Of a stretch of DNA of 64,000 nucleotides, positions 11,520 to 55,200 are shown one piece after another. This DNA is from Paragordius varius (lineage: Eukaryota > Animalia > Nematomorpha). The first letter of the stretch is position 1; each line of letters begins with the position of its first letter. Both the position numbers and the translations under genes were made by a program. The stretch is from contig OZ176050.1 of NCBI GenBank assembly GCA_964247055.1, positions 2,728,001 to 2,792,000 on the forward strand, given 5' to 3'. The notes under the pieces are model-generated. The model was not told the DNA's origin. It ran no database searches and worked only from the letters and a program-made list of their open reading frames with translations.

Positions 11520-14500
11520 TCAACCACCCAATTGTATCATCGGTAAACTTGTGGATAACTTTTCATCTGTATAGTATATAAAAATAGCAAAAAGCTCAGT
11601 ATAATAGTTATCTGGAAAAATATAGTTACTATAATTGATCGTATAAAAAATTACAACGTTATATCTAACCAAAATGGATAATTAAAATTGTTTTAAATTT
11701 AAAAATTTCTAATAAATTTGGAAGTTTTTTCACATGATTGAGTATTTCAATAATGATACTTGCGTTTTATATCTCTAAATTTTTTTTTAAAAAAAGGCAA
11801 AAATGCCTCTAAAAGCCAATAGATATCCTATACTTTCAGTGTGATGTGCCTTTTTAGTTGTCATGTATGATCGTATATTTTCCATTACAACGGTTTCCCA
11901 CTCTTGATCATTGAGATTGTGAGAAAAAGAGCCCCTTAGGTAAGGTTTAAAGTCAAATGCATTATGACCAAAAATGCAATGCTGCAAATATAATAGCATA
12001 CATATACTAATTATGTTTAAAAACTTTATTGTATATATTATATATTTTTAACAATTCAAAAATTAAATTTAAACATAATCTTAATAACTAAATAGTATGT
12101 TTTAACTAATTTTTAGCGTTTCATTCGAAGATAAGATAAAACAAAAAATATATAAACAACAATTATTTTTTCCAAGGACGCAAAAAATTTTCCATCAAAC
12201 AAGCTCATATTAAAAATAAAACTTAAAAGAAGCATATTACTTTAAGTAATCCATTAGATGTTAAACGTATCCTATTGCAACTTCCACAAAAATGTTGCGT
12301 CATTGTAGATATAAAACCTATACGGCCAACGAAACCTGGAATTTGATATACCTAAAAAGTTAAAAGTATAAAAGTTAGGTAGGTGGTAAGGTCTAGGACT
12401 CCAAATTCGGAGTTTTGTGGCCATGAAGTAATTCCCGCCATAACTTACGATCTTTACATTGTTCTGTCATGAAACTACGTTAATTCAAGTTCATTTTTAT
12501 ATTCTCATTATAGAAAAGGGATGGTCGCTTTTTTTTTCTTTTTCCATCAACATTGATGTTTTCAACAGTTTTTAAGGGTGGGTGTCATCTCTTCTTTGAG
12601 TATGACCGTAGACACGCAATCTATTAGTTTGGATGATATAATCGATTTTATCTGTTTTTTAATAAAAATTATAGTGTACGAAAGCAGCTTTTGAGTATTC
12701 GGCTCTCACTAGATAGGAGTTTTGTTTGATTAGTTTTGTTTTATGCCCAAGTTTCAAAACCATAGGTAAGAGCTAATCTTATTCCTGCTTTGTAAACTAT
12801 GGCCAACAAAGTCCTATTGCCACCTCCCTCCGGTGTTTGCTGGGGCATGAAAATGCACTAACGGCAAAGGCCAGTTTTTCTAATGATTTGTAAAATCATT
12901 AGTTGTACACAAGGGCATGTACGTGAAAAATTGCCTCAATAAACCATGAAGTATTAATAATATGAATATAAAAAAAGTATAACGGTCATGAAATCAACTA
13001 AATATATATATATATATATATATATAAAACTGGTTAATTTTTATAAAAATAAAATTTTAACAAAACATAATAAAGACACCAGTAACTGATTATAAATATA
13101 TACTTTAGTAATTTAATAACCAGGATATATCAATCCAAAAAAGATTATATGAAATTAAAATTTCTGTTAATACAAACTTTAGCACTAGATCCTTTGATAG
13201 TATTAATACGTTCGATGTTTGGGTAACCAGATTTAATTTTTTCAAGTATTTCACCATACGGTACTAATTTAGACGTGTCCCAACCATTGTCAAGGAAAGG
13301 CATATATTCAATAAATCTCACTTCTACGTCCTGCCCTTGTTAATAAAAAGTTAAAGTACTAAATTTTAAAATTATGAAAAAACTATTAAATAGTATTTAG
13401 CAAATTGTATACATATGAAATTTGTCGAAAATTTATGTAAATAATTAAACACTATATTTATAAAACTAGGATATAAATGGTATATTTTTTAAAGTTTTGC
13501 AAGTAGATATTTTTGAAACTAATTATAAACCGCTAATTTTTCAAATAATAGTTTACCAAAATGCTGTCAAAATAAATAAAGTTATTTTTAATTTAATTTT
13601 TTCGCGATTTAAATTTTAATGGCACAAATACATTTAAAAATTGCCCTTATTGTAATCGGTGTCACTATTAAATACAAAGCTTTCATGGAAAATAACCCAA
13701 AAAAATGTTAGATTTAAATTTGCAAAATGAAGCCATCAAATAAGTAAGCGTTGAAGGCTCTTTATGATAAATTAATATAAAACTTATGTGAACCTCTTAA
13801 TTTTAATAAATATCTAACAAAGTTACAAATTAATAATTATTTTATGTTAAGTTTCTTAAAATAATAATATACTTGATTGCATGCCAAATCTACAAATTTA
13901 AAAATTTCATCCTCATTAAAATTACGCATGATGACGCAATTGATCTAAAAATAAAAATGCATATACTTTTATAACAGGAAAAAGTTTGTTTCTTAAACAT
14001 TGAGTTAGACCAGTAAAAACTTTTTCGAATCTTTGAGATGATTTGCGTTTACAACCTTTAAGTTATATTGATTAAAACCTGTTATTTTGGAAAATTTAAT
14101 TGGATCTAATGTGTCAAGAGATACATTTAAATTTGTAAGTCCAGAATTTACCAAGGAATTTAACCGCTCCATTAAAAAATATCCGTTTGTTGTCAAACCT
14201 ATGGTTGCAATATCGGTATTAATTTTTATGTGGTCTAAATATCAAATAATGTTTAAAACTTATAAGTTTTATCGTATCTGATTTTAATAATGGTTCACCA
14301 CCGGTAATTCTAATTTTTTTTATGGAAGCATTTTTGTATAGCAGGTCAACAATTTTAGTTAATTCTGCAAAACTTAATTGGTGTTCAAAATATTTGTGAT
14401 TAATTTGTTGGGGATAACAATAATTACCTAAGGTTATTTTTGGCTTACATCTAAAATTGCACTTATCAGTAACGCTTATTCTCAGATAATTGTGCAACCG

Positions 14501-14634
14501 AAAATAATTGTCGTAAAGGCCAGTCCCTAGCGACCTACATGCTTGTGTCATGTGTTTTCATGGTATATCAAATCTGACATATGGTTGAGACGCTTTTTTA
14601 AAATATTGGCATTCGTTTTCTGTGCAGAAAACAT
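11520..14634 (-). CDS. MOCS1: GTP 3',8-cyclase (molybdenum cofactor biosynthesis protein MOCS1A / MoaA), about 350-360 aa
   Basis: Exons (minus) 14634-14579 and 14534-14449 (or a single first exon 14551-14449), then 14427-14260, 14234-14079, 14055-13967, 13944-13873, 13330-13178, 12351-12241, 11981-11834, 11566-11520. Spliced product has YLRISVTDKCNFRCNYC (CX3CX2C), KIRITGGEP, GLTTNG, NVSLDTL, INCVIMR, VRFIEYMPF, FCGSCNRIRLTSNGLLKHC (CX2CX13C) and terminal PMIQLGG-stop. Confidence 0.93.
12500..12900 (-). mobile_element. Decayed non-LTR retrotransposon (RTE-like) RT C-terminal fragment inside MOCS1A intron
   Basis: Minus-strand translation VYKAGIRLALTYGFETWA*NKTNQTKLLSSESRILK and, frameshifted, IQTNRLRVYGH and DGKRKKKRP resemble the LYK..IRP.LTYG.ETW / RLRW.GH / G.RP.GRP tail of LINE ORF2. 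Boundaries approximate. Confidence 0.65.
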
Positions 14635-15307
14635 TTCATGAGGAAAATTGTTATATAGTATTTAAAATATTTTTGCTAAGAGTAAATGCAATTAAATAAT
14701 TATATAACATTTTTTGCCAAATATATTGAAAAAACCAGGATAGTATTACCTATTTTTCTGTAAGGCCATTTTTTAAATATCAAGAGCTTTCCTTATTTGA
14801 TATCTGTAAAGCCTAATATAGGGTGACCAGATTTTTTTATGGAAAAAGGGGGACAAATCTGAGAAAGGGGGCCCGGAGGTACAACCAAAAAAATTTATTG
14901 TAATTTTTATTTTTAACACAAATAGATATATATTAAAAAATTTGAATCTTCGATATATTTTTTATTTGAATTGCAGATTATCATCATTTTTTAAAATATT
15001 GTAGAAGTCTATACAAGAATTTGTAAAATTATATTTGACAGATAAAATGGCCCTTAAAGTTTCAACATTTAAATTTGATTCCGATGTCCACAACTGCTGT
15101 AGAAATAACGCGCTTAGTAGCAGCGTTGGTTCCAGGCAAAGATAGTGCAAATTCCACAATTTTTATATTATAGTATGGAACATATTTTGTTTAATCTAAC
15201 CATTTCGTTTTCACTGTATTTTTTTTGTTGCTCATAATTTAAATTATTCATTATTAATATATTTTTTAACTAATGAAACTTCAGAAAAAAGATCATTTTC
15301 TGAAAGA

Positions 15308-15826
15308 TTACTTTTTGGGAATTTTTAGGAGATGCAGGTGTAAATGATTTTGGAATATCGCACCAAATGCTGGTTTTACTGTTATCCAATAAAAATGATC
15401 AATTTCATTGAATTGCACCGTCCAGGCTATCAAATAATTACAGTTTGTATAAAACATTATATGGTACATGTTATTTTGGCAATTTATTAAACCTTGTTTT
15501 TCTAAAATGCTTATAATATTGCGGATTGCTAATGGTATAAAATTATTTTCTCTTTCTTGACATTGGAATTTTAGGTTAACTTCATTAGCTAATTCGATTG
15601 GCGAAATTTTACCACCTTCTATCAATTTAATAGCATTTTGAAAGAGAAAAGCTTGATTATGTAGGAACTCTAACCATATTTTTAAAAAATCACATTCAAA
15701 AAACTTTCCAAAGTTATGGTACATTTGTCGTGATAAAAAATAGGATTTTAAAGGATCATACATTTTTAAATTTTTTTCGATAGCTGGCAGAAGAGCTAAC
15801 CAACAAGTTTTACAATATCCGAGCAT
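15308..15826 (-). pseudogene. hAT transposase fragment
   Basis: Longest surviving ORF of the outer element; neighbouring segments are frameshifted or contain stops. Confidence 0.8.
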
Positions 15827-16457
15827 TTTTTGATATTGAACTTAAAGTCGGATAACTGATATATGATGGGTATAAACATCAAACATATTACTGTGAGCGG
15901 CATTTTCACAGAATTCCTTTAGCGTTACCACGCGTACCGTGTTACATAAAAATAGGAATATACAACAATTACATTTTGCACATCTAGGGGTAGCAAATCA
16001 GCAGCTGTTTGAATAGCGTTGTGTATTATATGCTCTGCACACCCAACGCCGATAATGTTTTGATTAAGATTATCTGCTAATTTATAAAAAATATTTTTTG
16101 TTCCCCTCCTTGCTTTTCCACCGAAGTTTGTATTAGTGCTGTAAGCGCAATATGCGATGATTTTGTCTTTTAATTTTTTTTTTCATATTCATTATTGAAG
16201 TAATTATGTCGGAATTTTCACCGGGTAGAAAAATCAAATCAAAAAATCCTATTAAAGTAAAAAATAATTTTGTTTCTTTGTAATTTGATGCATCGAGTAT
16301 AGCGATATGAAATACTTTTCAGCACTTTTTGTATTTCAGTAAATGCTTGTGGAGAAAGGACATTGCACACAATGGCTTCAGCCTTTGTACGGGCACATGT
16401 AAATTTTTATTGAATAAGGTACGAATAACCTGTGAGGTACAATCTATAGATTCAAAG

Positions 16458-18167
16458 CAGGGTTTCTTAAACTATGGGTCGAGACCTCATTTGGGGTCGC
16501 GTAGCAAAATTATGGGGTCGCGAGTGATAAAAATACAATTTAACAAAAAAATCTTTTTAAACTTGTAAAATTATTGTTATAAAGAAAAATAACAATGATC
16601 GTATATAAATATATCCTAAAATCTTCTGGTTCGGAAAGACTCTTTATACCAGCATTTCCATATCGATCATTATAATCTATATATATTTATAAAAATGGAA
16701 TAGGCTGGCTTTGTGATATGTTTCCGGAAAACTGGTGGGCCCATTCAAATCCAAATGTCAAATAATCATTAATGAATTCCCCGACAATAACTTGGCCCTT
16801 TTTTGAATTAGGCTCCTAGTTCGGGCTCAACCCGTGAACGGTTTTTGAAAACACAAGCCCGCAAAAATCGTGTCTTTGCAATTTTCCGAAAAACGTGTTG
16901 GTCAATTTCAAATATGATTCTTTTTACCTTTTTTCTATTGCGCCGAACATAATCGGCTTACTTTTTTAATTTAGGCTCTCTTTTTACACTCTTCCCCCGT
17001 ACAATGCTAATTTTTTTCAAAAAAACCCAGTAATATTAATGAGAATTCCAGGTATTCCCTGATAAAAGGCAAAAGTTATAGTCTTGCGTTTTTTTAATAT
17101 TGGCTTCTGGGTAAACAGATAGCCGCTTAAACTGCGCCTATATATAGAAATGGCGTTGTTTTGGAGCTAATTTACAGATATAAAACCATATGAGCTCATT
17201 GAAAGCTTGAAATATTACTCGTAACTAGGTAGAGGTCGGGCTTTTTTATTTGCCGTTAATTTGGGGTCTTTATGCCCTCGCCATCATATAACGATTATTT
17301 AGTGTTGAGGTATTTTTCGAATAACTCATGAGACGATGGTATCAAAGATGATTCCAAATATTTCTCTATAAAGGCAAAGAATTTAATCAGCGCTTTTTCC
17401 ATATAGGTCTATGGGTAGGGGTCTACCGGTTTAAAACTGAGACGCCAATAGGCGTAGTTTTGGAACTAATTTTCAAGAATTTAGTCAAACACATTTCTGG
17501 ATAATTTGTATAATATCATTCTTTCCTTTAGAAACCACAAATGATTTACTTTTTATATCCCTTGATCCCAGATGTGTGAACACAATTTTAAAATAGAACT
17601 TTTAGCCATGATTTCGTAAAATGAAAATCTTATGATAAATTCCAATGATAATAGAATATTAACCATAAGCATATGGTCAATTTCGAGTAAACAATATTTG
17701 AGCCTATGCAAAAATGTAAAAGAATAATTAAAGACATTTTTTATTAAATATGGTTTTATTATTTTTTATCTCCATTAACTCTATTTATTGCAAATTATTA
17801 GGAATAATTATCGGTGGGACTAAGTCACAGCTAAGCGTGACAGGGCCAGCTAGTATCTTGTATAAATTTATTATGAATTAGAAAATGTTATAGAAATTTA
17901 CAAAAGATTTATTTTTGTCAATCTCTTAAAAGTGAAATTATCTTGTATAAATTTACTATGAATCAGAAAATGTTATAGGAATTTATAAAAAATGTAGATT
18001 TATTTTTGTCAATATCTCAAAACCGTATTAATCCTAATAAATATTATTAATAAAATTTCTATATGTTATTTCGAAGAAACTATTACTTTCTTTTATATTT
18101 GTTGGGGTCGTTAAGAAACACGCCATCATAAATGGGGTCGGGAACTCCAAAAGTCTAAGAAGTCCTG
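16458..18167. mobile_element. Non-autonomous hAT (Charlie-like) element inserted into the outer transposase
   Basis: TIRs CAGGGTTTCTTAAACT / AGTCTAAGAAGTCCTG; degenerate TSD ATTCAAAG / ATCTAAAG (6/8). Removing it rejoins the transposase as HNHSFR-SIDCTS. Confidence 0.8.
16676..17853 (+). mobile_element. Non-autonomous Helitron nested in the inner hAT element
   Basis: 5' A|TCTATATATATTTATAAAAATGG; 3' hairpin GTCAC-agctaagc-GTGAC followed by AGGGCCAG-CTAG|T. A-T target, no TSD. Strong similarity to 52330-53785. Confidence 0.8.
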
Positions 18168-18483
18168 ATCTAAAGGAATGATTGTGATTAACGGCGTGAA
18201 AAGATAAAACTTCGGCTAGTGCCAAATTTTTTTCTTCCTTTCCAAAAGCGGTTTTTTGATAAAAATCGCTCATTTTGTAATATGATGCCGCCATATCTAA
18301 ACTTTTTTATGTTTCTGTTTCCATATGCTTTGTAATATCATGCTTGCCGCCATGCGCTAGGAAATCTCCTCGCATAAAGAACATTTAACAAATGATTCAT
18401 TCTTCGTTTTTTTGATAAAAGAAAATTCTTTCATTAATTCATCGTTGATACAACCTTTCTTGTACTCATATTTTAACTAATAA

Positions 18484-20712: not shown

Positions 20713-20748
<36 letters not shown>

Positions 20749-21455: not shown

Positions 21456-21801
21456 TGCTATAGGGGTTTTCCTTGACAACAATATTGGCCAAAATAAGCA
21501 TATTAAACGCCAAGGCAAACTGGTTATTTACAAAAATCACGGTCAATCTCGACAGATATGGAACAGATACCATTTTGATTTAGAAATATCATTGTATATC
21601 AATTTTATATTTGAATAATCGGTATTATTTAACTTAATACTTTTTAGAAAAGCAGTTTGCCATAAAACTTAGTACAAATAACCATAGTTGTGCATTTGTT
21701 TCATGCCAGTTTCTTCTTAAAACTTAAGATATCGATATATATGGCGATTCTTATACTATAAAACTATAAATTTATTTATAAGCATGTAAATAGTATAGCG
21801 C

Positions 21802-23097
21802 TTAATGCGATATGAGATCCAAAATAATTTGATAAACTGTTTGCGGTGCATCTATACCCCAAATAAAATCAAGGTGATTATAATGGGGTAAATGATAATT
21901 TTTCCATTTGACTGATGGATCCAGTTGTGAGGTGAACAGCGCCAAATCTTTTGGATCTGAAATCCAATCTTTCCCACCAGTGTACAAGTAAAGTGATATG
22001 TTTTGGATAAGTTTGATATCATACATTGGAGGGGTTGGCTGTTGATACATCTCCACATTACCGAACGGGCCATAATCATACATGTCATAAAGGCCAGAAC
22101 GGATACCTTGAACAAAATGAATCATGTTTTTAACAGAGGTACCGGCAGGACTGTGAGCAAAGTACGTCGGTATTCTTGACTAAAATTATTTGCGTTAAAA
22201 AAAACTTTGAACTTTGTTGAGATTGATAGAATCTGGGCCACATATAAGGAAAAGCGTATTCGAACAAACAGATCTTACAAGTCTATGATCACAAAACAAT
22301 TCAGTCAATTCATCAATTATTTTGTTAGCTGGTAAAAAGCTTTTATCTTGTCCTAACATATACTCCAAAATTTCCAGAGAAACGGGTAATCGAGAAAACG
22401 TTTCTAAAGGCCCATAGGCGTTTTTAATGAAGGCCACTGGTGATAAAGCATGAAAAGATCTTATAGATAGGGAATTAATAAGACCTACATATATTAGTTA
22501 TATCGTAATTTACCTTTTGCGATTGCAGAAAACATAATTAATGTCCCCTGCGAGTGTCCAACATAATGAAGAGACTTTTCCTTGGTAATATTTAAAATAT
22601 AATGAACAATAACCGGCATATCGAATTGAGCCATATCGTCCCAACTAATATTCATACCAAAAATATTTAACCTGAAATCCCAAAATTTTGGATCTTTTAT
22701 TGTCAAATTTATATGCTTATTGGAATAGGTATTACCGCGAGAATTAGAAATCCAAACCTCATAGGATAAATCGGCCATAATAAATGCTTGATCATTAATA
22801 AATTTAAAAACCAAGACTTCCTTTTACTTGGTTAAGGACCCACATTGCTGAAGAACAAAGCAAACCATGCTGTAAAAGTACTACACCTTTAGATTCTTGT
22901 TTTGGTATTATTCTTTGTAAACTCAATATATATCCGTCTTGTGTGGAAATCTCATGATTTTCGACTTTATATCCATAGAATGTAATTATTTCGCTCTTAA
23001 AAAATTATTTTTAATTTACCACATTCTTTGATGTTTCAGGATCTTTAGAGGCATGTGTAAGATAAATTTTTAAAAAAAATAATGATAAAAACAACAT
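21802..23097 (-). CDS. Secreted/lysosomal acid lipase family (LIPA/gastric lipase-like), 385 aa, 6 exons
   Basis: Exons 23097-23020, 22995-22812, 22786-22672, 22644-22514, 22484-22213, 22179-21802. Signal peptide MLFLSLFFLKIYLTHA, DPE, TQDGYIL, LLQHGLLCSS, NSRGNTYS, FWDFSWDDMAQFD, GHSQG, PAGTSVKNM, GGKDWISD, YNHLDFIWG. Confidence 0.93.
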
Positions 23098-26000
23098 GTC
23101 TTAACTATAAAAAAATTTAACCATATAATGATTGCACTACCTACACCCTTGTCGAAAAAATAAAATAGAAGCTTTCCCCTATAGCCGAAACATGCGCTTT
23201 GCACATGACTTAATTTATGTATGTTATACCATATTATATCAAATTGTTGTGATTTCATAATAATCATTATAAAATAAATATCTCTTAATTTTCATAAAGA
23301 AAAACTTTAATTGTCCTATTTGTTAACAATACGAATAATTTATATCTTTAAATAAATATATTATTAATAAAATAAAATGATTTTAGATCAAAAGTTGATT
23401 ATAAAGCAAGTTTTATTTAGATTAAAAACAATAATACATTTTAACTATTAAAATAACTTTAACAAAAATTTACATATTACTGTATAGTAGTATATATTCC
23501 TAGAGGGTTATTAATTATTGCTAAATAGCATATACAACAAACGGCAGTATTATTGGCTTATGGTTGTTCTTTGCACTTTTTAATATTATTAGTCAATAAT
23601 AATTCTCCTTGCTGCATATGCCAATAACTTTCTATAGCAATATGTTGTTACTCATACTGTATCTAAATTTAAATGGAAGAAGACATATGAAATAAAAATT
23701 AATAAAAAAATAATGTATTACTTAGGTTTAAAATTTTCTAATGAGATTAAGATAGTTATTTATGTGATTAATTTCAATCTAAAATTAATATAGTGGCAAA
23801 CGAACTCCAACATACGCCTAACATAACATTATGCATTTAAATATAATCTGGCATAGGATATTCATGGAATTTTCAATTCTAGCTTCATTTGGAGATATTT
23901 GACGTGGTATTTCTCATTAAATAATCGTATTAGCGTCCATTACACAGTATTCATATGAAAAATATCATATTATAAATAAGTGTATTTGATCGTGCATTTG
24001 ACACTTTTGTAGTAACTGCTTTATAAAAGGAAATCCCAAAAATATGTTGTATTTTGTTAAACAACTTTTTAAAAAATTGTTTTAAATTGTAGATGTGGGC
24101 TCCAAAAGTCTCAAGTTTTTGTCCGGATTAGGCTGGTTTTTTTGTTAAGGCGAAAGGGCGATTTTTCGATAAATGAAAAAAGTTCATACCAAAAAAATGG
24201 ATATGCTTAAATATTTGATTTATAAAAAAATTTTGGTAAAGATAGGTTAATATTTTGATTCGAATTGGGGAAAGTCTCCAGACCATATTCAAGTTAAGAT
24301 AATTAAAAATAATAAGGCGACGGCTTTATTTATGCTTCTACCATGATATTTATAAATAATTTAAGATATTTAAATAAAATTTAGTTTTGAAAAAGCTTCA
24401 AAACAAGCTGCTTCGAGGCCTTTTTTGCAACATTTTTACAAAATGTTTTTTATTCTAACGCTAAAATCAAAGTTAATTTTTATAAAATTACATTTAACAT
24501 AAATAATAGCATTATAAGTGGTTTATTTTGCAGTATTTTTATAGTTTAGTTTTATAAATTTTAGTGATATACGAGTTACTACAAAGGTGATGAAAACTTT
24601 TGACTCGTAAGGGCCAAAACCCATAGCACCCCCTCCCCCAATGGCGAGGGTATTTCATTGTTATCCATATAATGGATTTAGTGTCTGCCAAAACAATTTT
24701 ATGAAAAACAATGTGGGCAACTTTTTTGATTTTACGATATCCACCCTTAAGCCCCACATCACCAGAGAGTTCTGAAGCATATTTTTATCAGAATCTATTT
24801 GTATCATATTTTTTTATTGACAATACGTGTAAACCTCAAAACATATTTTGAAGCTCAAATAGTTTTTTGGCATAAGAGCCGAGATTGCGCTGAATATTAA
24901 GTCCGTTTGGGCTAATTTCCTACACCCACGATTTCAAATATAATTTTTAAGTTGAATTGGTCTAAAAATATGCATTAATTAGCCACTTGGGCGCAATTAT
25001 TTAAATTGTAAAAACATCCTTTTTTCGCTATTTTGTTTTATTTTGAATTTTTATAATTGATTACAACAGGCATTTAATATGTATAAAAATTTAAAAATAT
25101 GATATTTTTGACTTAAGTAAGCTTTCAAATTAGATAATAGCTACAAGCTTTGCTAAATACATATTGATTTTAAGGTTATTAGCTAGTTTTTGGTTTCGGA
25201 TATATCTCGATTTTCGACTCCAGATGGATATTTAATACAGGATTGGCTTATTTTTGACCTTATTGTGATTTGAAGCATGATGGAAATACAACAAAGCTTT
25301 TTATACATCATTCGACTTTGCTGGAGATATTAATTACCCATATTTTGATTTAAATGAATTCTATTGTGCTTCCACAAAATACATTTAGATGCTTTTAAAA
25401 CTCTGAAAATAACTTATTGTTTAACTTTAATTATAGTTTATAATATAATAATGGATTTTTTAAAAAGAAACATTTATTATCCACCAAAAAAATTTATTCT
25501 CCATAATGTGGGTTAAGCTTCCCGATTTGGGGCAATTCAAAAGTATAAGTATTAATTTAAAATAATTAATACCCGTGTAAAAGGAAACTGTAAACCTGGA
25601 GATCTAATGAATAGCGTAAAGTTTACATTTTTAATTAAGTTTGGGCGAGCAACAATCGCAGGGAAAACACATTATAGTTTAATTTGAATTATAATCGTTA
25701 TAACAAATGCAAAATGTAATTCCCCTTTAACAACTTTTACCCTAAAAATTTAAATCTTGAGTTATATTAAATACAGCATATGAAAGCTTTTTTGTCTTCA
25801 GAGGATATAGTTGTAAGATGCTAGTAATTTAGGTTTATCGTTATTTCTAGATATATATAGTTAAAGCCAGTTTATTTGACAAAAATTTGATTTTTCGACG
25901 GTAGCTTAATTTAAAAAGCATAGTAAGAGCGGGATTTAAAGCTGAATTTATACCCAAACACATTATTCTTAATATAAAAATTTAGGCGATTTTTGTTTGA

Positions 26001-26370
26001 TAAAAATATAATTTTTCGGAAAATTTTATCGATGTCTTTAAAAATATTGCCTATTTTAGACCATTTTATTAATTTACTAGTTTCTAAATGTAACAGCTCC
26101 ATATCTTGGGTTCGGATCATATTTATTTATATCCGCGGTTTTATTTTAAATGCGTGGTGCCATTTGGCAAAGGTCCCATGCTGATGTATCAGGTGTTTAA
26201 AATTTTAGATATTTAATTTAATAAGTACCCTGAACTTATATTACAAAAATATTGGTAAAATTATAGAATAAATATAATAGCTCTTTCAACATAAAATCTT
26301 TATTTCATATATTTATCATAATATTTACAAGTTATCAAAATCATTCAAAGCTAAGCAGCATAAACCAATC

Positions 26371-26850
26371 CTATTTGCATTCATAACCGTACATATCCAA
26401 GGGTCTAATAAATGTGTAGTCATTTAAATATACAGACGTTCGTTTTTCATTTAAATTTTCTGTGCCAGAGTTATATTTAAACATTGAGCTTTTAAAGTTA
26501 TTGGTATCATAATTATTTTTAATGAAATTTGAAATGGGAATATGAGAAGACAAATTTGGCATTATCTGTTCTGTGTTGCGCCATAAAAACGGATCGTACG
26601 CAACACTTTTAGATTTAAATCCAAAATAGTCAAAATTGTTTAAGTTAGAATTTCTCTGATCGATATCCCCATATTTGACATTTTGTGTTGTTGAAAAAGG
26701 TCGAGTATATTGAGTAAATGAGTTATTACTGTTAAAGTTAGCATTTGGCTGGTTTGAAATTAGATTTCCACCCAGATGATCAAAGCTGTATTCAGGGATT
26801 GTTATGAGAGGCGTAGGTATAGAATCTCGATTATATACCAATGTATTCAT
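26371..26850 (-). CDS. Orphan 159-aa Asn/Ser-rich ORF, function unknown
   Basis: ATG-started uninterrupted ORF with visibly higher GC than its flanks and a composition like the low-complexity parts of AP-2. No motif recognised. Confidence 0.45.
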   Translation of the reverse strand: MNTLVYNRDSIPTPLITIPEYSFDHLGGNLISNQPNANFNSNNSFTQYTRPFSTTQNVKYGDIDQRNSNLNNFDYFGFKSKSVAYDPFLWRNTEQIMPNLSSHIPISNFIKNNYDTNNFKSSMFKYNSGTENLNEKRTSVYLNDYTFIRPLDMYGYECK

Positions 26851-28526
26851 TTAGGCTCTTTCCTTGATATGTCTAATGATTTGGGCAATTTAAAAAATTT
26901 TCAAATATTAAATTTTACAATATAAATTCAACAATCACATAAATGTTTACGTCTTTATTTTAGTATACTAAAAAATTGTTATGACTTTATTTTCCTAAAA
27001 CATAGGATATGTAACCTAGAATTCGAACCTAACTATATAAAATTAAGATGAGATTAATTATTATAAGCTACAATAAAAAAGGCCACAGTTATTTTCATTA
27101 CCATCAAAAAATTACCCTTGAATTTTCTTTTTATGCAATGTTATTATTATTTTTATTATTATATTATTCCAAAATCATAATTACAATTTGTTAATAATCT
27201 ATCTATTAACAACATTTTAATATACCCAAAAATATATATCAATTTTATTGTTTTTTAAGCACAATCATATAAAGATAAAGATGATAATTAAGGTTAATTT
27301 TTATTTATATTATATTTGGTTTGTCACAAATAAACATCATTCATTGTAAGATGTGCAATTAATTACGTAATAATAATAATATTTTTAGATAAATAAAGTA
27401 AATAAGGTGAAAAAATAAATTTGACAATACAAAAAAATTTGAGTTAATAAATAGTTAATATAAATTATTTACCTTGAAGCAATATATTATATATAATCAT
27501 ATATAATAATTTTTAATTATTCCAGTAAAAAAATATTTTTACCTTATGTTAGAGCCCAATTTTTACGTTTAAATCTTAAAAAACTAAAAAAGAAATGCAA
27601 TTGGTAATCAAAGAATTTTAATTCATTGGGGATTAAATAAATTATAAATATTTGGTAATTTATAATATTTTTAGCAAAGTATTAAAATAATTATTTATTT
27701 ATTTATGCATAAGAAATAGACCTAATTTGCATCAATTAAAAAAATAAAAAAAAAATAAAAAAAATAACCTAAAAATCCCCACTCTAATATAAAGGTGTCG
27801 TCCTCTCTTATACATACACTTGTTGTCCTACTGCTTTCAGAGTTATAAATAGGGTCTAATGTGTGCGCTTTAACAAATATTAATTAATTAATTCAAAGTT
27901 TTAATAATTAAAAAGTAGATAAATAAAAATATTTATATAAATAAAGAAAAAACACAAAATTTAATACAAAACAATTTACTACGATACAAGAATTTTCTGT
28001 ATTTATTCTATACATTATGATTTTTGATTTTCGACACTTCAATTCGCAAATCTTGACCAAATGAAACTCTTTAATGAGTTTTGTCATTAATTTTTTCTAG
28101 CTTTATTTTTCGAATAAACTTTCGAATATTTTTTAAATAAATAATATCAAATTAAATAATATCGATGCACACTCACTTATGATTTTGTAGATATAAATTA
28201 TATTTTTCCCAATTTAGTATCTATGTATAATTTTGTATCTTTTGTGTTGATATGCACAAGAGAGCTATTTGTTGTCATTAATTTGTTTTCATTTTCTCTC
28301 TTTCTAACGAATATCATTCAATCAAATCTTAGATTCTTATTGATCCAAGATGAAACTAAATAACTAATTGCAAGCTTTTAAAATTGCGTGGGCCCTTAAA
28401 TCCTAAAAATTAAAAAAAAGGATATCTATAAAATTCCTCTATTTCCCAAAATTATTTGAGTTATCCATCAATTAATTGAATATCGGAAAATGTAAAAATA
28501 TACCGAAAAAAATCCCTTTTGATTAC

Positions 28527-33731: not shown

Positions 33732-41318
<7,587 letters not shown>

Positions 41319-45330: not shown

Positions 45331-47704
45331 ATGAAACGACCATGGTCCCTACTTTTTGGGATTATTTTTTCGATCAAAAATATTAATCTAGATGCAATTT
45401 TGGAAATTTTATTCTCATTTCTCGATAAAATTGGTGTGTTTCTTGGACCAGTATATATTTATTATAATTTTAGATATTAATATTTTTAGTAGTTTCCATG
45501 GTCGCATCAGTTGTAATTATTTTTCATATGCTGTTTTTAAACGAGATACTTAATAATTATAACACATTCGGCAAGTTATTTATTTGGATATTGGGTCACT
45601 ACTTCCTGTGTCAAATCGTATTGTTTTATTTTAAAGCTTTGATGATTTCGCCCGGTTACCCTAAAACAGTAGTTTTTCAGTAATTTTTTAGGTTACAGAT
45701 CTAAATTATAATTTTTGTAAAAAGTGCAATAACATTAAACCGGCCCGTACTCATCATTGCTCACTTTGCAAACGGTGTGTCCTTAAAATGGATCATCATT
45801 GTCGTAATAATATATTTTTGATGCTTTTTAGCTTGGCTCAACACATGTGTTGGACACTTCAATCATAGATACTTTTATTTATTTATGCTTTTTACTGCAC
45901 TTGGATGCACATACGTAGTTTATCATGTCTTCCCATATTTTTATTCTTATGTCCTGCCTGATTACGTTTTATAAATGACTAATTTTTTAGTTTTGGTGGA
46001 GTATTTTGAACATTGAATCTTACAATATGGTAGCTTTTAAATCTGATTTACACAAGGCTATCTTATTACAATACCCTCAAGTACATTACTTTATTTCTCT
46101 TTACACTGATTTAATTCATTCAACACTATGTGTATTTTATTATAGCAAAAAATATGAAAACCTTGGATTAAAATTAAACTAATAAACTTATGTAAAACAG
46201 TTGTATTTGTATTATTAACTTTATCGGTGTTTCATCTAATTTATGTATTTAAGAATGATATTAGCAGTATAAGTATTTCAACAAAATATTATGAAAATTA
46301 TATTTATGTTTTTTTATATTTAAAAAATAAGGCTCAGACGATATGCGTTTTATAATTTAAATTTTGTTTAAAATGTGGTATAATATATTATTTTTTAATT
46401 GTACAGCACACTATAACCCAGAACATGGTTACACAAAGCGTCATTTATAAAAATTTGATTGCTTATGAATTTTTGCTTCCTTTAGTCGCTGCCTTTTCCC
46501 TTTGTAAGTGTTTATAATTTTAAATTGTTTAATATATAGCTGGAAAATACTTTTAATTATACTGCTGGTAGGCATGGTCTTTACCATCGAAGTAAGCTTA
46601 AAAACCAATTTTGGATCGCATTTATAATAAATATTATGATGCCATTTTTTGTTCATTTTTTGTTCATTATATTTTCATTTTTTTCATCGGTTATTTTATT
46701 TAATGGAATCACACCTAATGCATTTAATCAAACTCATTTAAATAAATGTTTTCTGGTAATGTTTTCAAACATATATGTTTTTTCGAATAGGCTTAAATTT
46801 AGAATCTTTTCAAATTGTATGTTGTGGTTTTACCCGCTAAATTTTAATGTTTTGACGTTATAATTGAATCGATAATGTTATATATTCCAAAAAAATTTGA
46901 GTTATTATACTATCATAGATTGCTTATTGCTTTGGCATGGTTACTTAATTACACGAGGCGAAACGAGTATTGAAACATATGTTAACCGTGATCGCAAAAA
47001 AGATTTACTAAAGTTTTCTAGCCTATATAACGGCGACTCACCTTCAAAATATGAAAACCCATATGACTTGGGTTGGAAAAATAATTGGAAACTTATGTTT
47101 GGTTCCAATACAATAAGGTAATGAATGGTTCGTAATAACTTTTATTGTAAAATATAAATCATGATTTGATATAATATTTTTAAATAATTATTTATTTAGG
47201 GGAATATTGTACACGATATTTGTACCATCTTTCCATGATATTCGCCTAATATGTCGTGCATTTTGGAAAAACCGAACACATGCCTACAATAAAAGGGATA
47301 ACGATACATTACATTCCATTTCGGCCATTGGTGATGGTTATTGTTGGGACCCGAATTATCTTTTAACATCCCTTAAGCATTTTGATTCCAGTAAAAAGCC
47401 TCTCAAGAATGAAAATAATTATATATCCCCACAAAATCCTAATATAATAAAAGAGGGGAGGTGTTTAAATAGGTCAGATCGATACACTAATTCTGTGGCA
47501 GTTCCCATTCCATCCTATCAATTGTACAATAATGCTCATACTAATTCTTCTCATTCCAATGAACAAAATATTGTTAATTTTTATACGGATCAAAAGGAAT
47601 CCAATGTTAATATTTCTCCAATAACTGGTGTTGCAATTAATATGGCATCTGAACAAAACCCCAACATGAATACTCATAGCTTGAATCTAGTCAAAAACAT
47701 TTAA
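45331..47704 (+). CDS. ZDHHC16: DHHC palmitoyltransferase, ZDHHC16-like (about 483 aa, 8 exons)
   Basis: Exons 45331-45450, 45474-45668, 45692-45803, 45832-45965, 45991-46080, 46407-46503, 46919-47117, 47200-47704. [74 protein letters not shown]. Start codon uncertain. Confidence 0.88.
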
Positions 47705-49233: not shown

Positions 49234-52200
49234 TTACCACACGTTGCATTTTTTCACCGGATTCATTTTACTGCCGATTGGGCAGTTATAAGCATTTGAG
49301 AAATCTATTGAATTTGATAGCGGTCCAATTACTCTATAATATTGCATATACAATAAATTAGCATAAAAAATTATAAGATATAATTAAATGCAAGTCAATT
49401 CACCAGATTTTACTTCCAAACTGATATTTTTTATTTTTAAAGTGGCTGAGTTTCTTGATACTACCGTGCCTAAATATTAGTTACCGATTTTTTATAATAT
49501 GAAGGTCGATAATAAAATTACCTAATAGGTCCTGGACTGTGAACGGATGAATGTATTTTATTTAAGGCTTCCTCAGGTCTCATCGAACCACACCATATCT
49601 GTAATTTTATATATAAATTAATTTATGATTTTGAAAAAAAAAATTCGAATGGCAAAAAATATTAGCTTACCTGAGCATAATTTAAAAAGAAAAGTTGATT
49701 ATGTGTCAAATTCAGTGAAGGTATTAATTTTTCGGATCCGTGTTTTTTAACCCATTTTTGATAGGCCTATCAAATAAAAAGAATGTTAATTTTTAAACAA
49801 TTTTGTTAAATGAGTAAGCTGATATATTACTCTAAAAGCTTGTTTTAGACCCCCGTTATCAGCAATATTTTCACCCTGGGTGTTGCGTCCATTAATCTAA
49901 TGCATAAATTGGTAAGTCATATTCAGAAATAAGTAAAAATGCCTATAGAAAAGTATTGTTTCATTTAAATACTAAGAATATTTGTTCTTACATATAAATC
50001 GATTTCCTTTAACTTGTATTTGGAATATTGTTCTATGATACATTTAGCCTGTGTACGAAAGGCGCTTATGGTAGAATTATTCCACCATTGTTTAAGGTTT
50101 CCATCCTTATCAAATTGGCGGCCTTTCTCATCAAAACCATGCGTTATTTCATGGCCAATAACTACCCCGATGCCTCCATAATTTAACGATCTATATAATA
50201 AAAAAATATATTTAAACCAAAAAAAATTAAAATAGCTGGGATAATTAAATTCTTAAATACTTGGGAAATGTGTCGCTATAGAAGAGTGGCTGTAAAATTC
50301 CTGCTGGAATAACTAAACAAAGATGATACAATATTTTAAATAATCATAGGACATGAATAATAACCGAAAATATGAGAAATACCAATATTATTTTTGTTTG
50401 GACTGTAAAACGCGTTAACCACCGCGGGACCAGTTGACCATCTAAAATAGGGTAAAATTGAAAATCCTAAACTTTACATTAAATTTTTTGAAAAAACTTA
50501 ACAAAAAAAGTTTGACTTCAATATTGTAAAATGGCTTTCAAATTAAATTTATAATTAAAAAAAGTTTAAATACCTATCCCTATCTACCGGTCGATGTAAA
50601 TCTCTATAATTTTTTACAACTTGATATTTGTTGATGGCAATAACGTTATTTAAGAAGTCTTGATTTGGGTTTATCTGTACCATAAAATAATTGCAATATT
50701 GAGATAAAATTCATGAAACCAGTGTTTAAAAATAGATTATACCCCTTCATATTCCTTTAGCAATTCCGTATCGTTAAAAATATATTCAGGATATCCGATT
50801 AGCTCACTCATTGCATTGGCCTATAAAAGAAAGCGCTGTATTTAACTCAAAATTATCATACTTTTTCTTCTGCTACTTTGCGAGTGTTGCTATCCATCCA
50901 TGAATTAGATTCCAACAGCTCATTGAAAGCGTCTCTAATGTCATGAATCATTTCCATAGCCTAGACATCATCCAAAAAAATATTTTTGTTTTTTTGATAT
51001 ATGTTAGAATTCGTCAAAATATCAACGTAAATGGTAAGGGTGAGATATTAAGTCCGATATTTACCAAATTACAAAGCATAAAAACGCTAAGGGTTTTAGA
51101 AAAGACGATTTGTCTTAATTATTACTAGGGTTATCCAATTGTACATTAACTTTCTCATACTCACTCATTTAGGGTAATATTAAATAGTTTTATGGTTTTT
51201 TAGAATTTGCTTAAATCTACCGATTCTTTGCTATTGTTTTTGAAGTGTTGACGAACAAACATGGTGCCGACCGGCATTTCTAAATGTTCGTTCACATAAT
51301 CCACACATTGTTGCCATTTTATGACAGGAGCTGAAACACCAAATATCACTTTACGAAATTCAAAAAGGGCTTCCAAGTACCCTTTGGACATGTATGGTAT
51401 GAAGGAGTTGACATGGCGCCATAAAGCATAATTAACAAGTTTTCTAAAATTAATATTAGATAAAAACAATGTTTATTCATAGTATTTATTGATTGAAATA
51501 TTTTCCTAGTCCTTTTTTTAAAAAAATACTCTTAAATTTAGATAGAAACTCTATCATTGGTTCAATCGACTCTCAGATCAATGTTCAGAAAAAATGTTCA
51601 ATTAAAAAACTTGCTTATTGGTATTATTTTATGTGAGTTAAAATAATAAATGTACTGAAGCTGTTCAGAATGCTTGCCTAAAAACTAATTTTATCAATCC
51701 AAACGGTTGTGGTAATATTTAACACTTCTAAAATGCTCCCTATCAAAATACCAAAATTTATTATATCTAATTTAACGGTTACATGAAGAAGATGTATATC
51801 GTTAAGCTTTTTCTTTGAACCAAAAATTTTGGTTAAAATATGTTAATCTGCAAAATATTTTTGAAAAATACGGTATCGCATCTAATAAAAAAATTTAAAA
51901 TTTTTATTGGTGGGTATTAAAATGCAAAAAAAATTTTTGCCATTATAACATATGAGCAAAATGCGCAATAAGGCTATCTTGACGCTAAAAAAAGTGGACT
52001 CGTATAAAAAATTTAAGTTTAGTTCTTTTTTAAAGATTTTAAAGTGTCCTCTTTCAATTAATTTATTAATGATGCAACTAAATATTTTATCAAAATATTT
52101 TTTGCTACAATTTCGAAAATTACGTTTTTTTCTAAAAGTATATTTTTATATTTTTATTTATATAACTAAATAGATTACGGATAAAAATTTGGTTTTATAT

Positions 52201-55200
52201 TTTTTATATTTATAAAATGCTTATAGCACGAAGTTAACACCCATAAGTAAAAAAGAATTGAATCACAAAAGTCGGCACGGTGGGATAACTATTTTTTAAG
52301 TAGAATATTAAGTTTAAAAAAGTTAATAATCTATATATTTATAAAAATGGAAAATGCTGGCTTTATGATCTGTTTCCGGAAAACCGGTAGACCCATTCAT
52401 ATCCAAATGTCGATAAAATATAATTATTAATGAATGCCCCGACAATAGGTTCGCCCTTTTTTGAATTAGGCCCCCAGTTCGGACCCACCCCGTGTGAAAA
52501 ACGGGTTTTTTTTGAAAACAGAAGTCCACAAAAATCGTGTCTTTGAGACAACTTTCCGGATAACGTGTTGGACAATTCAATTTCAAATATGATTTTTGTT
52601 TACTTATTTTCGATTGCGCCGAACATAGTCGTCTCGCTTTTTTAATTTAGGCCCTCTTTTTACCCGCTTCCCCCGTAAAATGCCATTTTTCCAAAAAACA
52701 AAAGTCTACAAAAATAATTTTTTGATTCTATTTTTCGCCCAAGGTATAAAACCGTAAAAATTCAATAAAGATTTAAGGTATTCCCTGTTAAAAGGCAAAC
52801 TTAGTCAAGCGTTTCTTTGATGATAGCTGCTGAGTAAGAAGCTACCCACGAAAAAGTGACCCGTCATATCGGAATAGCGTGCTTTTGGGGCTAAGTTTCA
52901 GAAAACCTATCAGGCCATATAAGTTCAATAGCTGCTTAAAATATTACCCGTAACAAGGCAAAAATTTAGATCGTGCGGTTTTTTAAAATTAGCCGTTAAT
53001 TAATCCCTTCATGCTCTGAAAAATGCGCCACCATAGAATGATTTCATAATCTTGAGGCAATTAAAAACTAATAAGAGCATATGGAATCAATCATGATTCC
53101 AGGTATTCTCCGTATAAAGGAAAAATTTAATCAGGCGCTCTTTTTGTATCAGCCTCTGGGTAGGGAGCTACCCGCCAAAAACTGCGCCACTATATAGAAA
53201 TTACGTTGTTTTGGAACTATTTTAAAGACTTATGCCATATGAGCTCATTGTTCGAAATATTACCCGTAACTAGGTCAAAATTAAGGTCAGGCCTTTTTTT
53301 ATTAGATGTTAATTTGGGGCCTTTATGCCCTAATACGCCATCATATAACTATTATTTAGTGTTGAGGTATTTTTTCGAATAACCCATGAGACGATGGTCT
53401 CAGCGCATTTTCCATATAGGCGTAAGGGTAGGGGTCTACCGGTTTAAAACTGAGACGCCATACAAAAATGGCGTGGCTTTGGAGATAATTTTCAAAAAAC
53501 TTAAGAAGCCACGCGAGTTCACTTAAGGCTTTAAATATTACGCATAAAAAGGTAAAAATATATAGTATAGCGGTTTTTTCCGTTAGCCGTCAATTCGGGG
53601 CCTTTATACCAGTAAACAATATATTAGTATGAAAGCAACATTTAGAAAATCCTATGAGCTCATTATTAAAAAATATTTCGAAATAATCCACATATATGGA
53701 TCATTTTATTGATCCCTTTTTTCAAATAGCCCTCCCCGGAAGTCCGAAGGACTTCCCGTGCGTAGCAGCACGAGATTTGCGCTAGTTATGATATAAAATA
53801 TATCGAACATAAACCTTCTCGGCGTGGTAGAAAATAACTTTCCCATAAAAACCAGAAAGCGTTCGGAGTAGACAACGATTTGTTCATGTTCTGATATTTT
53901 AGATGTTCCAGGGATGTTCTTAAAGAATTTCATCCAATCAAACTATGAGTTAAAATAGAATTTACTTGAGGGACAATTTGTTTGAGCTGTTGAATTTTCA
54001 TTTTGAGGTAGAAAGCGCTCGCATCATGTCTATCAGCATTTGGAACTGATGCCTATACATATCATAAAAAATTTATTAATATTTTAAAACGTTGTTATGT
54101 ATAAAAAAAATTAACTCTTAAAATAATATTACTATGATTAAATGTAGACTTGGTTAAAATATATATAATTAGTTATGTAAAATTTGAACTAAATTACAAC
54201 ATACTAAAGCGATTTCAGTTTCAAGATCCACAATCTCATCCGCTTCTTGTTGAGCTCTAGGACCGCCCCCACCCATGAGCAGTACAACGGCATAGACGAG
54301 CCTTTTGTAAGCGCGGATAATCAAAGTTTCTTCCGAATTTAAATAGTATTCACGGCTTGGCAAAACAAATGAATTTTGATCCACCTAATAAAAATTCGTG
54401 AAATTTAATTTATTGAAGAGCCTTTTTACTTTAGTCTTAATATTTGTATTATACTATTGAACTAAATATTTACCTGCAGAATATTCATAGAAGAATTTTT
54501 ATCGTCAGGACCGACCATGATTTCCATATAAGCCGGTGTGTTATAGGATATTAATTGAGCTAATAAAACTTCGATTGAAAAATTGTTGGCTGGATTCCAA
54601 GTTTCATTCAAGATCGGCCATCCACCCATTGATTTTAGAGTTTCTTTTATCGGTTCTTCAGCGTTTTCACCTAGTGTTACAAAAAATAAGTGTAATAGCG
54701 TCTTGTCGGATTTTTATGCGGCCGGATGTAATTTTATTCTTATTTTTAACCAAAAAATCAAGTGACCTAAACCTAAGAAAAGTCGAAGTTTAATTCACCG
54801 CATAAATTTCAAAAATTCATAATGCAATTTTAAAATGATATGTACTTGCATTTAGACAAGATTGGTATAATAATTTAGCTTTGTTTACAGCTATGAGATC
54901 GGTTGCATTAATAGGTTCTTCCAATAATTCTAGAAAACAAAATTATTTAGACATATTTTTTAATTATCCACAAAATATATAAAAATATATTATCAACCTT
55001 TTAACAGGATTTGAAGTTTGGATGATAAAACTTCGAAAGTACTGATACTACTTCTATCTTCGGGTATGATATGATATCGATTCCAAGATCCACAAGCAAA
55101 TTGATAAAAGTCATCACAGGGGTCGGCCTGAACATCCATACCTTCCATCAAAATTGCCGCTTTGATTGAAAAAATGGTTGGTTTATATATTGTAATATAT

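What the first reader, a model, noticed from the sequence alone, without database searches (positions are those of the whole stretch)
13945..53965. A class of ultra-short (21-33 nt) spliceosomal introns coexisting with normal-sized introns in an animal genome
Seen: 14 GT-AG segments of 21, 22, 23, 23, 23, 23, 24, 25, 25, 25, 27, 28, 29 and 33 nt across four unrelated genes (MOCS1A 4, lipase 5, ZDHHC16 4, neprilysin 1). Removing them restores frame and conserved motifs. The same genes or their neighbours also have introns of 41 nt to 2.4 kb. Established: introns this short are best known from ciliates, nucleomorphs, microsporidia and dicyemids, whereas most animals have a practical floor near or above 40 nt. 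Inference: this lineage has a spliceosome able to handle a distinct micro-intron mode alongside long, transposon-containing introns.
Basis: partly seen in the sequence, partly recalled or inferred. Interest (0 to 1): 0.92.

Follow-up and report, generated by a model that had tools for sequence, protein, structure and literature searches.

The report
Tiny 21-33-base introns, probable hairworm
Four ordinary genes of this very AT-rich animal genome (probably a horsehair worm) are interrupted by 14 apparently genuine introns of only 21-33 bases next to introns of 41-2,371 bases, a size so far published for only two other animal groups, but I could get no RNA reads to show the cutting.

Summary
Observation confirmed. 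All 14 GT...AG segments exist at the stated lengths. Four lie in MOCS1A, five in an acid lipase, four in ZDHHC16 and one in a neprilysin.

Removing them gives stop-free reading frames of 348, 385, 217 and 661 codons. It restores the radical-SAM CX3CX2C motif and the DHHC-CPW block, and leaves the exons collinear with family profiles. The lipase then aligns without gaps to 38 full-length homologues.

Four of the five lipase micro-introns sit at the same codon position and phase as introns of 114-4,105 nt in other animals. So they look like shrunken ancestral introns.

Contigs from a second individual carry the four MOCS1A segments with base changes but no indels, which rules out assembly artefacts.

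About 50 introns could be placed in the window. Their lengths run 21-33 nt (14 introns), then 41, 53, 64-95, and on up to 2,371 nt. The micro-introns are clustered and mostly lie at gene 5' ends, as flatworm microintrons do.

Not shown: splicing in RNA, because no RNA run held these genes. The taxon was also not shown here; Nematomorpha rests on earlier scan notes and GC content.

The scan has already reported this phenomenon many times on other windows of this genome. The papers I could search report introns under 30 bp only in dicyemids and myxobolid myxozoans.

The parts
11790..14551 (-). MOCS1A (GTP 3',8-cyclase) gene: 8 exons, with introns of 21, 25, 23, 22, 542, 826 and 259 nt
   Evidence: Spliced reading frame of 348 codons without stops. 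The exons map in order onto the NCBIfam TIGR02666 moaA profile, positions 1-23, 25-80, 90-134, 160-182, 185-231 and 241-275.
14428..14448 (-). 21-nt GT-AG micro-intron, phase 1, inside the CX3CX2C motif
   Evidence: Removal turns CNFRC-KPKITLG-NYC into CNFRCNYC. Exon 1 ends at profile position 23, the split Cys codon is position 24, and exon 2 starts at 25. If retained it would be an in-frame, stop-free 7-aa insertion in the Fe-S motif.
14235..14259 (-). 25-nt GT-AG micro-intron, phase 1
   Evidence: If retained, a stop follows after 13 codons. The flanking exons are collinear with the moaA profile. A second individual's contig shows no indel here.
14056..14078 (-). 23-nt GT-AG micro-intron, phase 1
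   Evidence: If retained, a stop follows after 24 codons. The second individual has two base changes inside it (14059, 14062), with GT, AG and the length kept.
13945..13966 (-). 22-nt GT-AG micro-intron, phase 0
   Evidence: If retained, a stop follows after 14 codons. The next exon starts at moaA profile position 160.
21802..23097 (-). Acid (gastric/lysosomal-type) lipase gene: 6 exons separated only by micro-introns of 24, 25, 27, 29 and 33 nt
   Evidence: Spliced reading frame of 385 codons with a signal peptide and the GHSQG motif. Matches Abhydro_lipase and Abhydrolase_1. No relative gaps at any junction against 38 full-length homologues.
22996..23019 (-). 24-nt micro-intron, phase 0
   Evidence: Same alignment column and phase as introns of 149-4,105 nt in crinoid, nemertean, bivalve, sea anemone and nematode lipase genes. 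Contains an in-frame stop.
22787..22811 (-). 25-nt micro-intron, phase 1
   Evidence: Same column and phase as a 178-nt intron in the second lipase domain of the Onchocerca flexuosa gene. If retained, a stop follows after 2 codons.
22645..22671 (-). 27-nt micro-intron, phase 2
   Evidence: Same column and phase as introns of 135-1,125 nt in all five comparison species. If retained it would insert 9 residues into the conserved FWDFSWDDM block.
22485..22513 (-). 29-nt micro-intron, phase 1
   Evidence: Gap-free junction against homologues. The position is not shared; it lies 7 columns from a conserved phase-0 intron. If retained, a stop follows after 6 codons.
22180..22212 (-). 33-nt micro-intron, phase 0
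   Evidence: Same column and phase as introns of 114-1,619 nt in the five comparison species. Contains an in-frame stop.
45331..47701 (+). ZDHHC16-like palmitoyltransferase gene: the first four introns are 23, 23, 28 and 25 nt, followed by longer ones (about 459-516 nt, an unresolved 45-240 nt, and 82 nt)
   Evidence: The spliced 5' part is 217 codons without stops. 3' junction candidates are.
45451..45473 (+). 23-nt micro-intron, phase 0
   Evidence: Restores the frame between exons 1 and 2. If retained, a stop follows after 9 codons. No profile covers this junction.
45669..45691 (+). 23-nt micro-intron, phase 0
   Evidence: Joins ...SPGYPKT to [12 protein letters not shown].... If retained, a stop follows after 4 codons. 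The DHHC profile starts 5 residues into the next exon.
45804..45831 (+). 28-nt micro-intron, phase 1, inside the DHHC-CPW block
   Evidence: Exon 3 maps to Pfam DHHC positions 5-36, the split Pro codon is position 37, and exon 4 maps to 38-76. Removal restores DHHCPWLNTC.
45966..45990 (+). 25-nt micro-intron, phase 0
   Evidence: Restores the frame. If retained, a stop follows after 2 codons. No profile covers this junction.
49237..56910 (-). Neprilysin (peptidase M13) gene with about 18 introns: one of 23 nt, the others 41-2,371 nt
   Evidence: From exon 3 onward the spliced reading frame is 661 codons and ends ...CNVW. Junction search. The exons are collinear with Pfam Peptidase_M13_N.
53943..53965 (-). 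23-nt micro-intron, phase 0, the only one in the neprilysin gene
   Evidence: It is the only frame-keeping GT..AG solution between the two flanking exons. The downstream exon starts at M13_N profile position 225. The 29-residue upstream exon fills positions 195-224. If retained, a stop follows after 11 codons.

Best explanation
The 14 segments are genuine U2-type (GT-AG) spliceosomal introns that have shrunk to 21-33 nt. Most descend from ancestral animal introns.

Each keeps only a minimal signal set:
- GT followed by A or T at the 5' end;
- an A-rich stretch about 8-11 nt before the 3' end, the likely branch point;
- a run of about four T and then AG.

They form a discrete short class, mostly adjacent to one another and near gene 5' ends. 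They sit beside ordinary short introns (about 41-95 nt) and long, repeat-bearing introns in the same transcripts.

Shown here: their presence, boundaries, necessity for the reading frame, positional homology for the lipase, and presence in a second individual's DNA.

Inferred: that the spliceosome removes them, presumably by intron definition with an unusually short distance between the 5' splice site and the branch point.
For: - Exact coordinates and GT..AG ends for 14 of 14. The chance frequency of GT..AG for segments of these lengths is 0.0017, and it is the only boundary pair present at all 14 junctions.
- Stop-free spliced reading frames of 348, 385, 217 and 661 codons. If retained, 12 of the 14 would give a stop within 2-24 codons. 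The other two would insert 7 or 9 residues into conserved motifs.
- Exons abut on family profiles: moaA 1-23 | 25-80, DHHC 5-36 | 38-76, M13_N 134-194 | [29 aa] | 225-262.
- All five lipase junctions are gap-free against 38 full-length homologues.
- Four of five lipase micro-introns share alignment column and phase with introns of 114-4,105 nt in crinoid, nemertean, bivalve, sea anemone and/or nematode genes.
- A 738-nt contig from a different sample of the same organism covers 13863-14600 with 25 base changes and 0 gaps. Contigs of three other runs agree.
- Six of nine listed exonic polymorphisms in MOCS1A are synonymous in the spliced frame.
Against: - No RNA evidence. The runs labelled RNA for this organism held none of the sampled words of two stretches. 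The four runs I laid were all DNA.
- ZDHHC16 junctions 1, 2 and 4 rest only on frame restoration and GT-AG ends; no profile or homologue covered them.
- Two introns whose length is a multiple of three (21 and 27 nt) have no stop. They could be retained without breaking the frame.
- The branch-point assignment is weak in a 72% A+T background.
- A blind scan for deletions that join open reading frames did not enrich GT..AG over control dinucleotide pairs. The case therefore rests on homology, not on reading frames alone.
Confidence: 0.9

Rival explanations
1. The segments are small insertions in decaying genes (pseudogenes), or indel errors of the assembly, and are not removed from any transcript.
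For: No RNA data. A blind scan shows that many deletions can join open reading frames by chance in this sequence.
Against: - All 14 have GT..AG ends.
- Sizes fall in a narrow range.
- The four genes carry no other frame disruption.
- Four of five lipase sites are ancestral intron positions.
- The same segments occur without indels in a second individual and in four independent runs.
- Exonic polymorphisms are mostly synonymous.
Confidence: 0.03
2. The segments are removed, but not by the ordinary spliceosome. Possibilities are precise DNA elimination in somatic cells (as with ciliate internal eliminated sequences), another RNA-processing route, or translational bypass.
For: Segments of 21-25 nt are shorter than the distance between the 5' splice site and the branch point that is usual in model animals. 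Nothing here shows which machinery acts.
Against: - The boundaries are GT..AG, not the TA..TA of ciliate eliminated sequences.
- Positions and phases coincide with spliceosomal introns of other animals.
- The 5' and 3' ends look like those of the longer introns in the same genes.
- All DNA runs laid contain the segments.
- Myxobolids and dicyemids have introns of this size with conserved U2 and U2AF (PMC13644364).
Confidence: 0.04
3. The segments are real introns but are spliced inefficiently or conditionally. In particular the stop-free 21-nt and 27-nt ones may be retained, so that retention serves regulation or yields protein variants.
For: The 21-nt MOCS1A and 27-nt lipase introns would read through in frame. 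Very short microsporidian introns are reported to splice at a median of about 25% (cited in PMC13644364).
Against: Both in-frame insertions would fall inside strongly conserved motifs, CX3CX2C and FWDFSWDDM. The retained forms are therefore unlikely to function.
Confidence: 0.15

Closest known systems
Flatworm microintrons (Opisthorchis felineus and other Neodermata, Macrostomum); PMC6530080
   Same: A discrete short-intron class beside kilobase-long introns in large genomes. Microintrons lie next to each other and preferentially at gene 5' ends. They often lack a clear polypyrimidine tract. Default annotation settings miss them.
   Different: The flatworm peak is near 37 nt, with a second peak near 90 nt, and the class is defined as under 75 nt. 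Here the mode is 23-25 nt and 13 of the 14 are under 30 nt. The lineage is also different: probably Ecdysozoa (Nematomorpha), not Platyhelminthes.
Ultra-short introns of myxobolid Myxozoa and Dicyema japonicum; PMC13644364
   Same: Canonical GT-AG introns of about 20-30 nt in animals. The 5' signal is reduced to about 'GTa'. [quoted passage not shown] The hosts are parasitic.
   Different: In those lineages the genome-wide median is 22-27 nt and the genomes are compact. Here only about 28% of the window's introns are this short. The rest are 41-2,371 nt, and the long ones hold high-copy repeats.
Ciliate, nucleomorph and microsporidian tiny introns (Paramecium about 25 nt, Stentor 15-16 nt, Bigelowiella nucleomorph 18-21 nt)
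   Same: They show that a spliceosome can excise introns of this size.
   Different: They are not animals, and their size distributions are uniform. Part of this comparison (the Paramecium and nucleomorph sizes) rests on my own knowledge. The Stentor and ciliate references are cited in PMC13644364.

Membership tests
U2-type GT-AG spliceosomal intron | GT at the 5' end and AG at the 3' end | tested here: met
   14 of 14.
U2-type GT-AG spliceosomal intron | Removal is needed to restore the reading frame and the homologous protein | tested here: met
U2-type GT-AG spliceosomal intron | Position and phase homologous to introns of orthologues or paralogues in other species | tested here: met
   Four of five lipase introns. 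Not testable for the other three genes, because no full-length homologues with gene structures could be fetched.
U2-type GT-AG spliceosomal intron | Branch point and polypyrimidine tract | tested here: inconclusive
   T in 10-11 of 14 at positions -6 to -3, and A in 7-9 of 14 at positions -8, -10 and -11. A YTRAY motif is present in only 8 of 14, and the background is AT-rich.
U2-type GT-AG spliceosomal intron | Absent from mature mRNA | not testable with these tools
Genome-wide ultra-short-intron lineage (myxobolid/dicyemid type) | Median intron length under 30 nt | tested here: not met
   In this window 14 of about 50 introns are 21-33 nt. The others are 41-2,371 nt. This is one window only, not the genome.
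Genome-wide ultra-short-intron lineage (myxobolid/dicyemid type) | 5' splice signal reduced to about GTa | tested here: met
   Position 3 is A (8) or T (6). There is no consensus at positions 4-8 or in the exon flanks.
Flatworm-type microintron class | A discrete short peak, separate from longer introns, within the same genes | tested here: met
   Lengths are 21-33 (14 introns), then 41, 53, 64-95 (10 introns), and 111-2,371. The sample is small.
Flatworm-type microintron class | Microintrons adjacent to each other and biased to the gene 5' end | tested here: met
   MOCS1A introns 1-4 of 7, ZDHHC16 introns 1-4 of 7, and lipase 5 of 5. The exception is the single neprilysin micro-intron, seventh of about 18.
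Flatworm-type microintron class | Peak length about 32-37 nt | tested here: not met
   The mode here is 23-25 nt.
Ciliate-type internal eliminated sequence | TA..TA boundaries and absence from somatic DNA | tested here: not met
   The boundaries are GT..AG. The segments are present in all four DNA runs laid. The tissue of origin is unknown.

The most novel reading that the evidence does not exclude
Horsehair worms are a third, independent animal lineage with introns under 30 nt, and the first in which they form a separate 5'-clustered class inside a large, repeat-rich genome. Default aligners and gene finders cannot model such introns. [quoted passage not shown]
Probability: 0.35. Interest if true: 0.8.

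Novelty: new member of a known kind. Interest (0 to 1): 0.62.

Why it matters
A September 2026 survey of 51 animal genomes found introns under 30 bp only in myxobolid myxozoans and a dicyemid (PMC13644364). It linked them to extreme genome compaction.

A macroscopic bilaterian with a genome of a few hundred megabases, full of repeats, would break that link if it carries a discrete 21-33-nt intron class next to kilobase introns. It would also give a natural within-genome contrast for asking how a spliceosome recognises introns of 21 nt and of 2 kb in one transcript.

There is a practical side. PMC6530080 notes that microintrons are under-represented in draft annotations because default minimum intron lengths are too high. 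The published hairworm annotation pipeline (STAR plus BRAKER/AUGUSTUS, BUSCO 71.6%, 10,320 genes; 10.1101/2023.06.26.546503) does not mention intron length at all. Gene-loss claims for this phylum should therefore be rechecked.

Tried and rejected
1. RNA evidence. Two run searches found only DNA holders. The runs labelled RNA for the same organism held 0.00 of the words. I suspected X4 and X5 were RNA, because their word share resembled the exon fraction. Laying them showed contiguous genomic contigs from a polymorphic second individual.
2. Close relatives and taxon. Three homologue searches returned no close relative and no copy of the window's own proteins. They used the MOCS1A reading frame, a lipase alignment seeded with a full-length homologue and the 434-aa TFAP2 exon. 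I therefore could not confirm Nematomorpha or compare orthologous loci in a sister species.
3. P0004, the best single hit to the last lipase exon at 52% identity, lies in a 40% GC genome. It is not a close relative.
4. Blind scan for GT..AG deletions of 18-36 nt that join two stop-free stretches of at least 30 codons. It found 168 loci, against 166-215 for control dinucleotide pairs. It is not discriminative and was replaced by the homology-anchored boundary test.
5. tRNA and Rfam scans of the window found nothing.
6. The Cunha et al. 2023 hairworm genome paper is not held in the library. I could not check whether it mentions intron sizes.
7. Looking up the full spliced proteins in the exact-sequence index was left out. 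A spliced protein has no reference and would have had to be typed.


Full report
**What is there**

The window has 27-28% G+C throughout and no tRNA or Rfam match.
- MOCS1A (- strand): 21, 25, 23 and 22 nt, at 14428-14448, 14235-14259, 14056-14078 and 13945-13966.
- An acid lipase (- strand): 24, 25, 27, 29 and 33 nt, at 22996-23019, 22787-22811, 22645-22671, 22485-22513 and 22180-22212.
- A ZDHHC16-like palmitoyltransferase (+ strand): 23, 23, 28 and 25 nt, at 45451-45473, 45669-45691, 45804-45831 and 45966-45990.
- A neprilysin (- strand): 23 nt, at 53943-53965.

**Are they needed?**

Removing the segments, together with the longer introns I could place, gives reading frames without stops:
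- MOCS1A: 348 codons.
- Lipase: 385 codons, complete from signal peptide to stop.
- ZDHHC16, 5' part: 217 codons.
- Neprilysin from exon 3 to its ...CNVW end: 661 codons.

Stop triplets make up 7.2% of all triplets here. Stop-free frames of 217-660 codons are therefore expected at about 1e-7 to 1e-22 by chance.

If retained, ten segments shift the frame and bring a stop within 2-24 codons. Two of the four whose length is a multiple of three carry an in-frame stop. The other two would insert 7 residues into the radical-SAM CX3CX2C motif and 9 residues into the conserved FWDFSWDDM block of the lipase.

**Do the exons abut on independent models?**

Each exon was scanned on its own.
- MOCS1A exons map to the NCBIfam moaA profile at 1-23, 25-80, 90-134, 160-182, 185-231 and 241-275. 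The Cys codon split by the 21-nt intron is position 24.
- ZDHHC16 exons 3 and 4 map to Pfam DHHC 5-36 and 38-76. The split Pro codon is position 37.
- Neprilysin exons map to Peptidase_M13_N at 134-194, then a 29-residue exon, then 225-262, 266-336 and 338-370.
- The spliced lipase was aligned with 38 full-length homologues from an exhaustive search. It shows no gap relative to them at any of its five junctions.

ZDHHC16 junctions 1, 2 and 4 are not covered by any model. They rest on frame restoration and GT-AG ends alone.

**Is GT...AG more than chance?**

Only 0.17% of random segments of these lengths in the window start with GT and end with AG. I let each boundary slide by 6 nt either way while keeping the frame. 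GT..AG is then the only one of the 256 dinucleotide pairs available at all 14 junctions. The runners-up are AT-rich pairs such as TT..TT, at 12 of 14, and the mean over all pairs is 2.1.

A blind scan for deletions that join open reading frames was not discriminative: 168 loci for GT..AG against 166-215 for controls. The argument therefore depends on the homology anchors.

**Ancestral positions**

I fetched the gene loci of lipase homologues from a crinoid (Anneissia japonica), a nemertean (Tubulanus polymorphus), a bivalve (Sinanodonta woodiana), a sea anemone (Actinia tenebrosa) and a nematode (Onchocerca flexuosa). I derived their exact exon structures.
- The 24-, 27- and 33-nt introns lie in the same alignment column and phase as introns of 114-4,105 nt in all five species.
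- The 25-nt intron shares column and phase with a 178-nt intron of the nematode gene only.
- The 29-nt intron is unshared. It lies 7 columns from a conserved phase-0 site.

At roughly eight conserved sites in about 1,150 coding positions, four exact coincidences out of five are expected at about 1e-8. These are shrunken ancestral introns, not insertions.

**Not an assembly artefact**

No RNA holder was found. All four runs laid on 8900-14600 are DNA.

One contig, from a different sample of the same organism, covers 13863-14600 in a single piece with 25 base changes and no gap. Contigs from three other runs agree. Two of the changes fall inside the 23-nt intron and spare GT, AG and the length. 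Six of the nine listed exonic changes in MOCS1A are synonymous in the spliced frame.

The same depth table shows very high copy number at 10046-10427 (first NSDHL intron) and at 12338-13101 (the 826-nt MOCS1A intron). This confirms that the long introns carry repeats.

**Anatomy and distribution**

The 5' end is GT followed by A (8 introns) or T (6), with no further consensus. At the 3' end, positions -6 to -3 are T in 10-11 of 14. Positions -8, -10 and -11 are A in 7-9 of 14. The longer introns of the same genes have similar ends.

I could place about 50 introns across the seven genes of the window. Their lengths are:
- 21-33 nt: 14 introns;
- 41 and 53 nt: one each;
- 64-95 nt: ten;
- 111-260 nt: about ten;
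- 400-2,371 nt: the rest.

A few junctions are unresolved. The first neprilysin junction has candidates of 30-111 nt, and one ZDHHC16 junction has candidates of 45-240 nt.

The micro-introns are clustered. They are introns 1-4 of 7 in MOCS1A, 1-4 of 7 in ZDHHC16 and all five in the lipase. Neprilysin has one of about 18. The Cys-loop channel, NSDHL-like and TFAP2 genes have none.

**Comparison with what is known**

PMC13644364 (Mol Biol Evol, September 2026) reports introns under 30 bp only in myxobolid myxozoans and Dicyema japonicum among 51 metazoans. It describes the same reduced 'GTa' 5' signal and A residues upstream of the AG. It does not mention Nematomorpha.

PMC6530080 describes flatworm microintrons. 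They peak near 37 and 90 bp beside a 3-kb peak, lie next to one another, favour gene 5' ends and are missed by default annotation settings.

The present case has the architecture of the flatworm class and the size of the myxobolid and dicyemid introns. I therefore file it as a new member of a known kind.

**Taxon**

I could not verify it; three homologue searches found no close relative. Several leads point to Nematomorpha:
- Earlier scan notes name a horsehair worm.
- One note describes a long coding palindrome in the mitochondrial genome. That trait is published for Nematomorpha only (PMC6649704, listed).
- The Gordionus montsenyensis assembly has 26.93% G+C and 63.8% repeats.
- One lipase intron position is shared only with a nematode.

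That genome preprint never mentions introns. No accessible paper links Nematomorpha to tiny introns. The Cunha et al. 2023 paper could not be read.

**Verdict**

The interpretation as spliceosomal micro-introns coexisting with long introns is supported at about 0.9. Direct RNA proof and any statement about the spliceosome itself are missing.

The scan has already reported the same phenomenon on many other windows of this genome. What this window adds is the second-individual DNA check, the five-species positional test for the lipase, and a window-wide intron length table.

Noticed in passing
window 10046-10427: The first intron of the NSDHL-like gene holds a repeat whose summed contig depth is 100-600 times that of the flanks in all four DNA runs. 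It is a very high-copy element or satellite.
   Followed up: no
window 12338-13101: The 826-nt MOCS1A intron holds another high-copy repeat, with depth up to about 100 times the flanks and many loose ends in the contigs.
   Followed up: no
window 7975-8127 (wider region 7393-8240): A tandem array of a 21-nt unit, 7.3 copies at 98% identity, that stays open in several reading frames on both strands.
   Followed up: no
window 13863-14600: A second sample of the same organism differs at 25 of 738 positions (3.4%) with no indel. This is very high diversity, or a cryptic sister lineage.
   Followed up: partly
window 8900-14600 and 21700-27600: Runs filed under four other organism labels (B-E) hold 6-41% of the 31-mers. 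Run X3 (organism B) carries near-identical contigs at low depth. These could be infected hosts, mislabelled samples or sibling species.
   Followed up: no
window 22180-23019: The five lipase micro-introns grow steadily from 5' to 3' (24, 25, 27, 29, 33 nt), and the gene has no other intron.
   Followed up: no
window 22787-22811; L006: Among the five species compared, the 25-nt lipase intron's position is shared only with the nematode Onchocerca flexuosa. It may be an intron position specific to Nematoida.
   Followed up: partly
window 51444-53814: The 2,371-nt neprilysin intron contains at least four degenerate copies of a unit spaced 154-278 nt apart.
   Followed up: no
window 34303-36210 and 40014-41318: The TFAP2 gene has two giant, low-complexity coding exons of 635 and 434 codons. 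Only about 15% of the second aligns to other AP-2 proteins.
   Followed up: no
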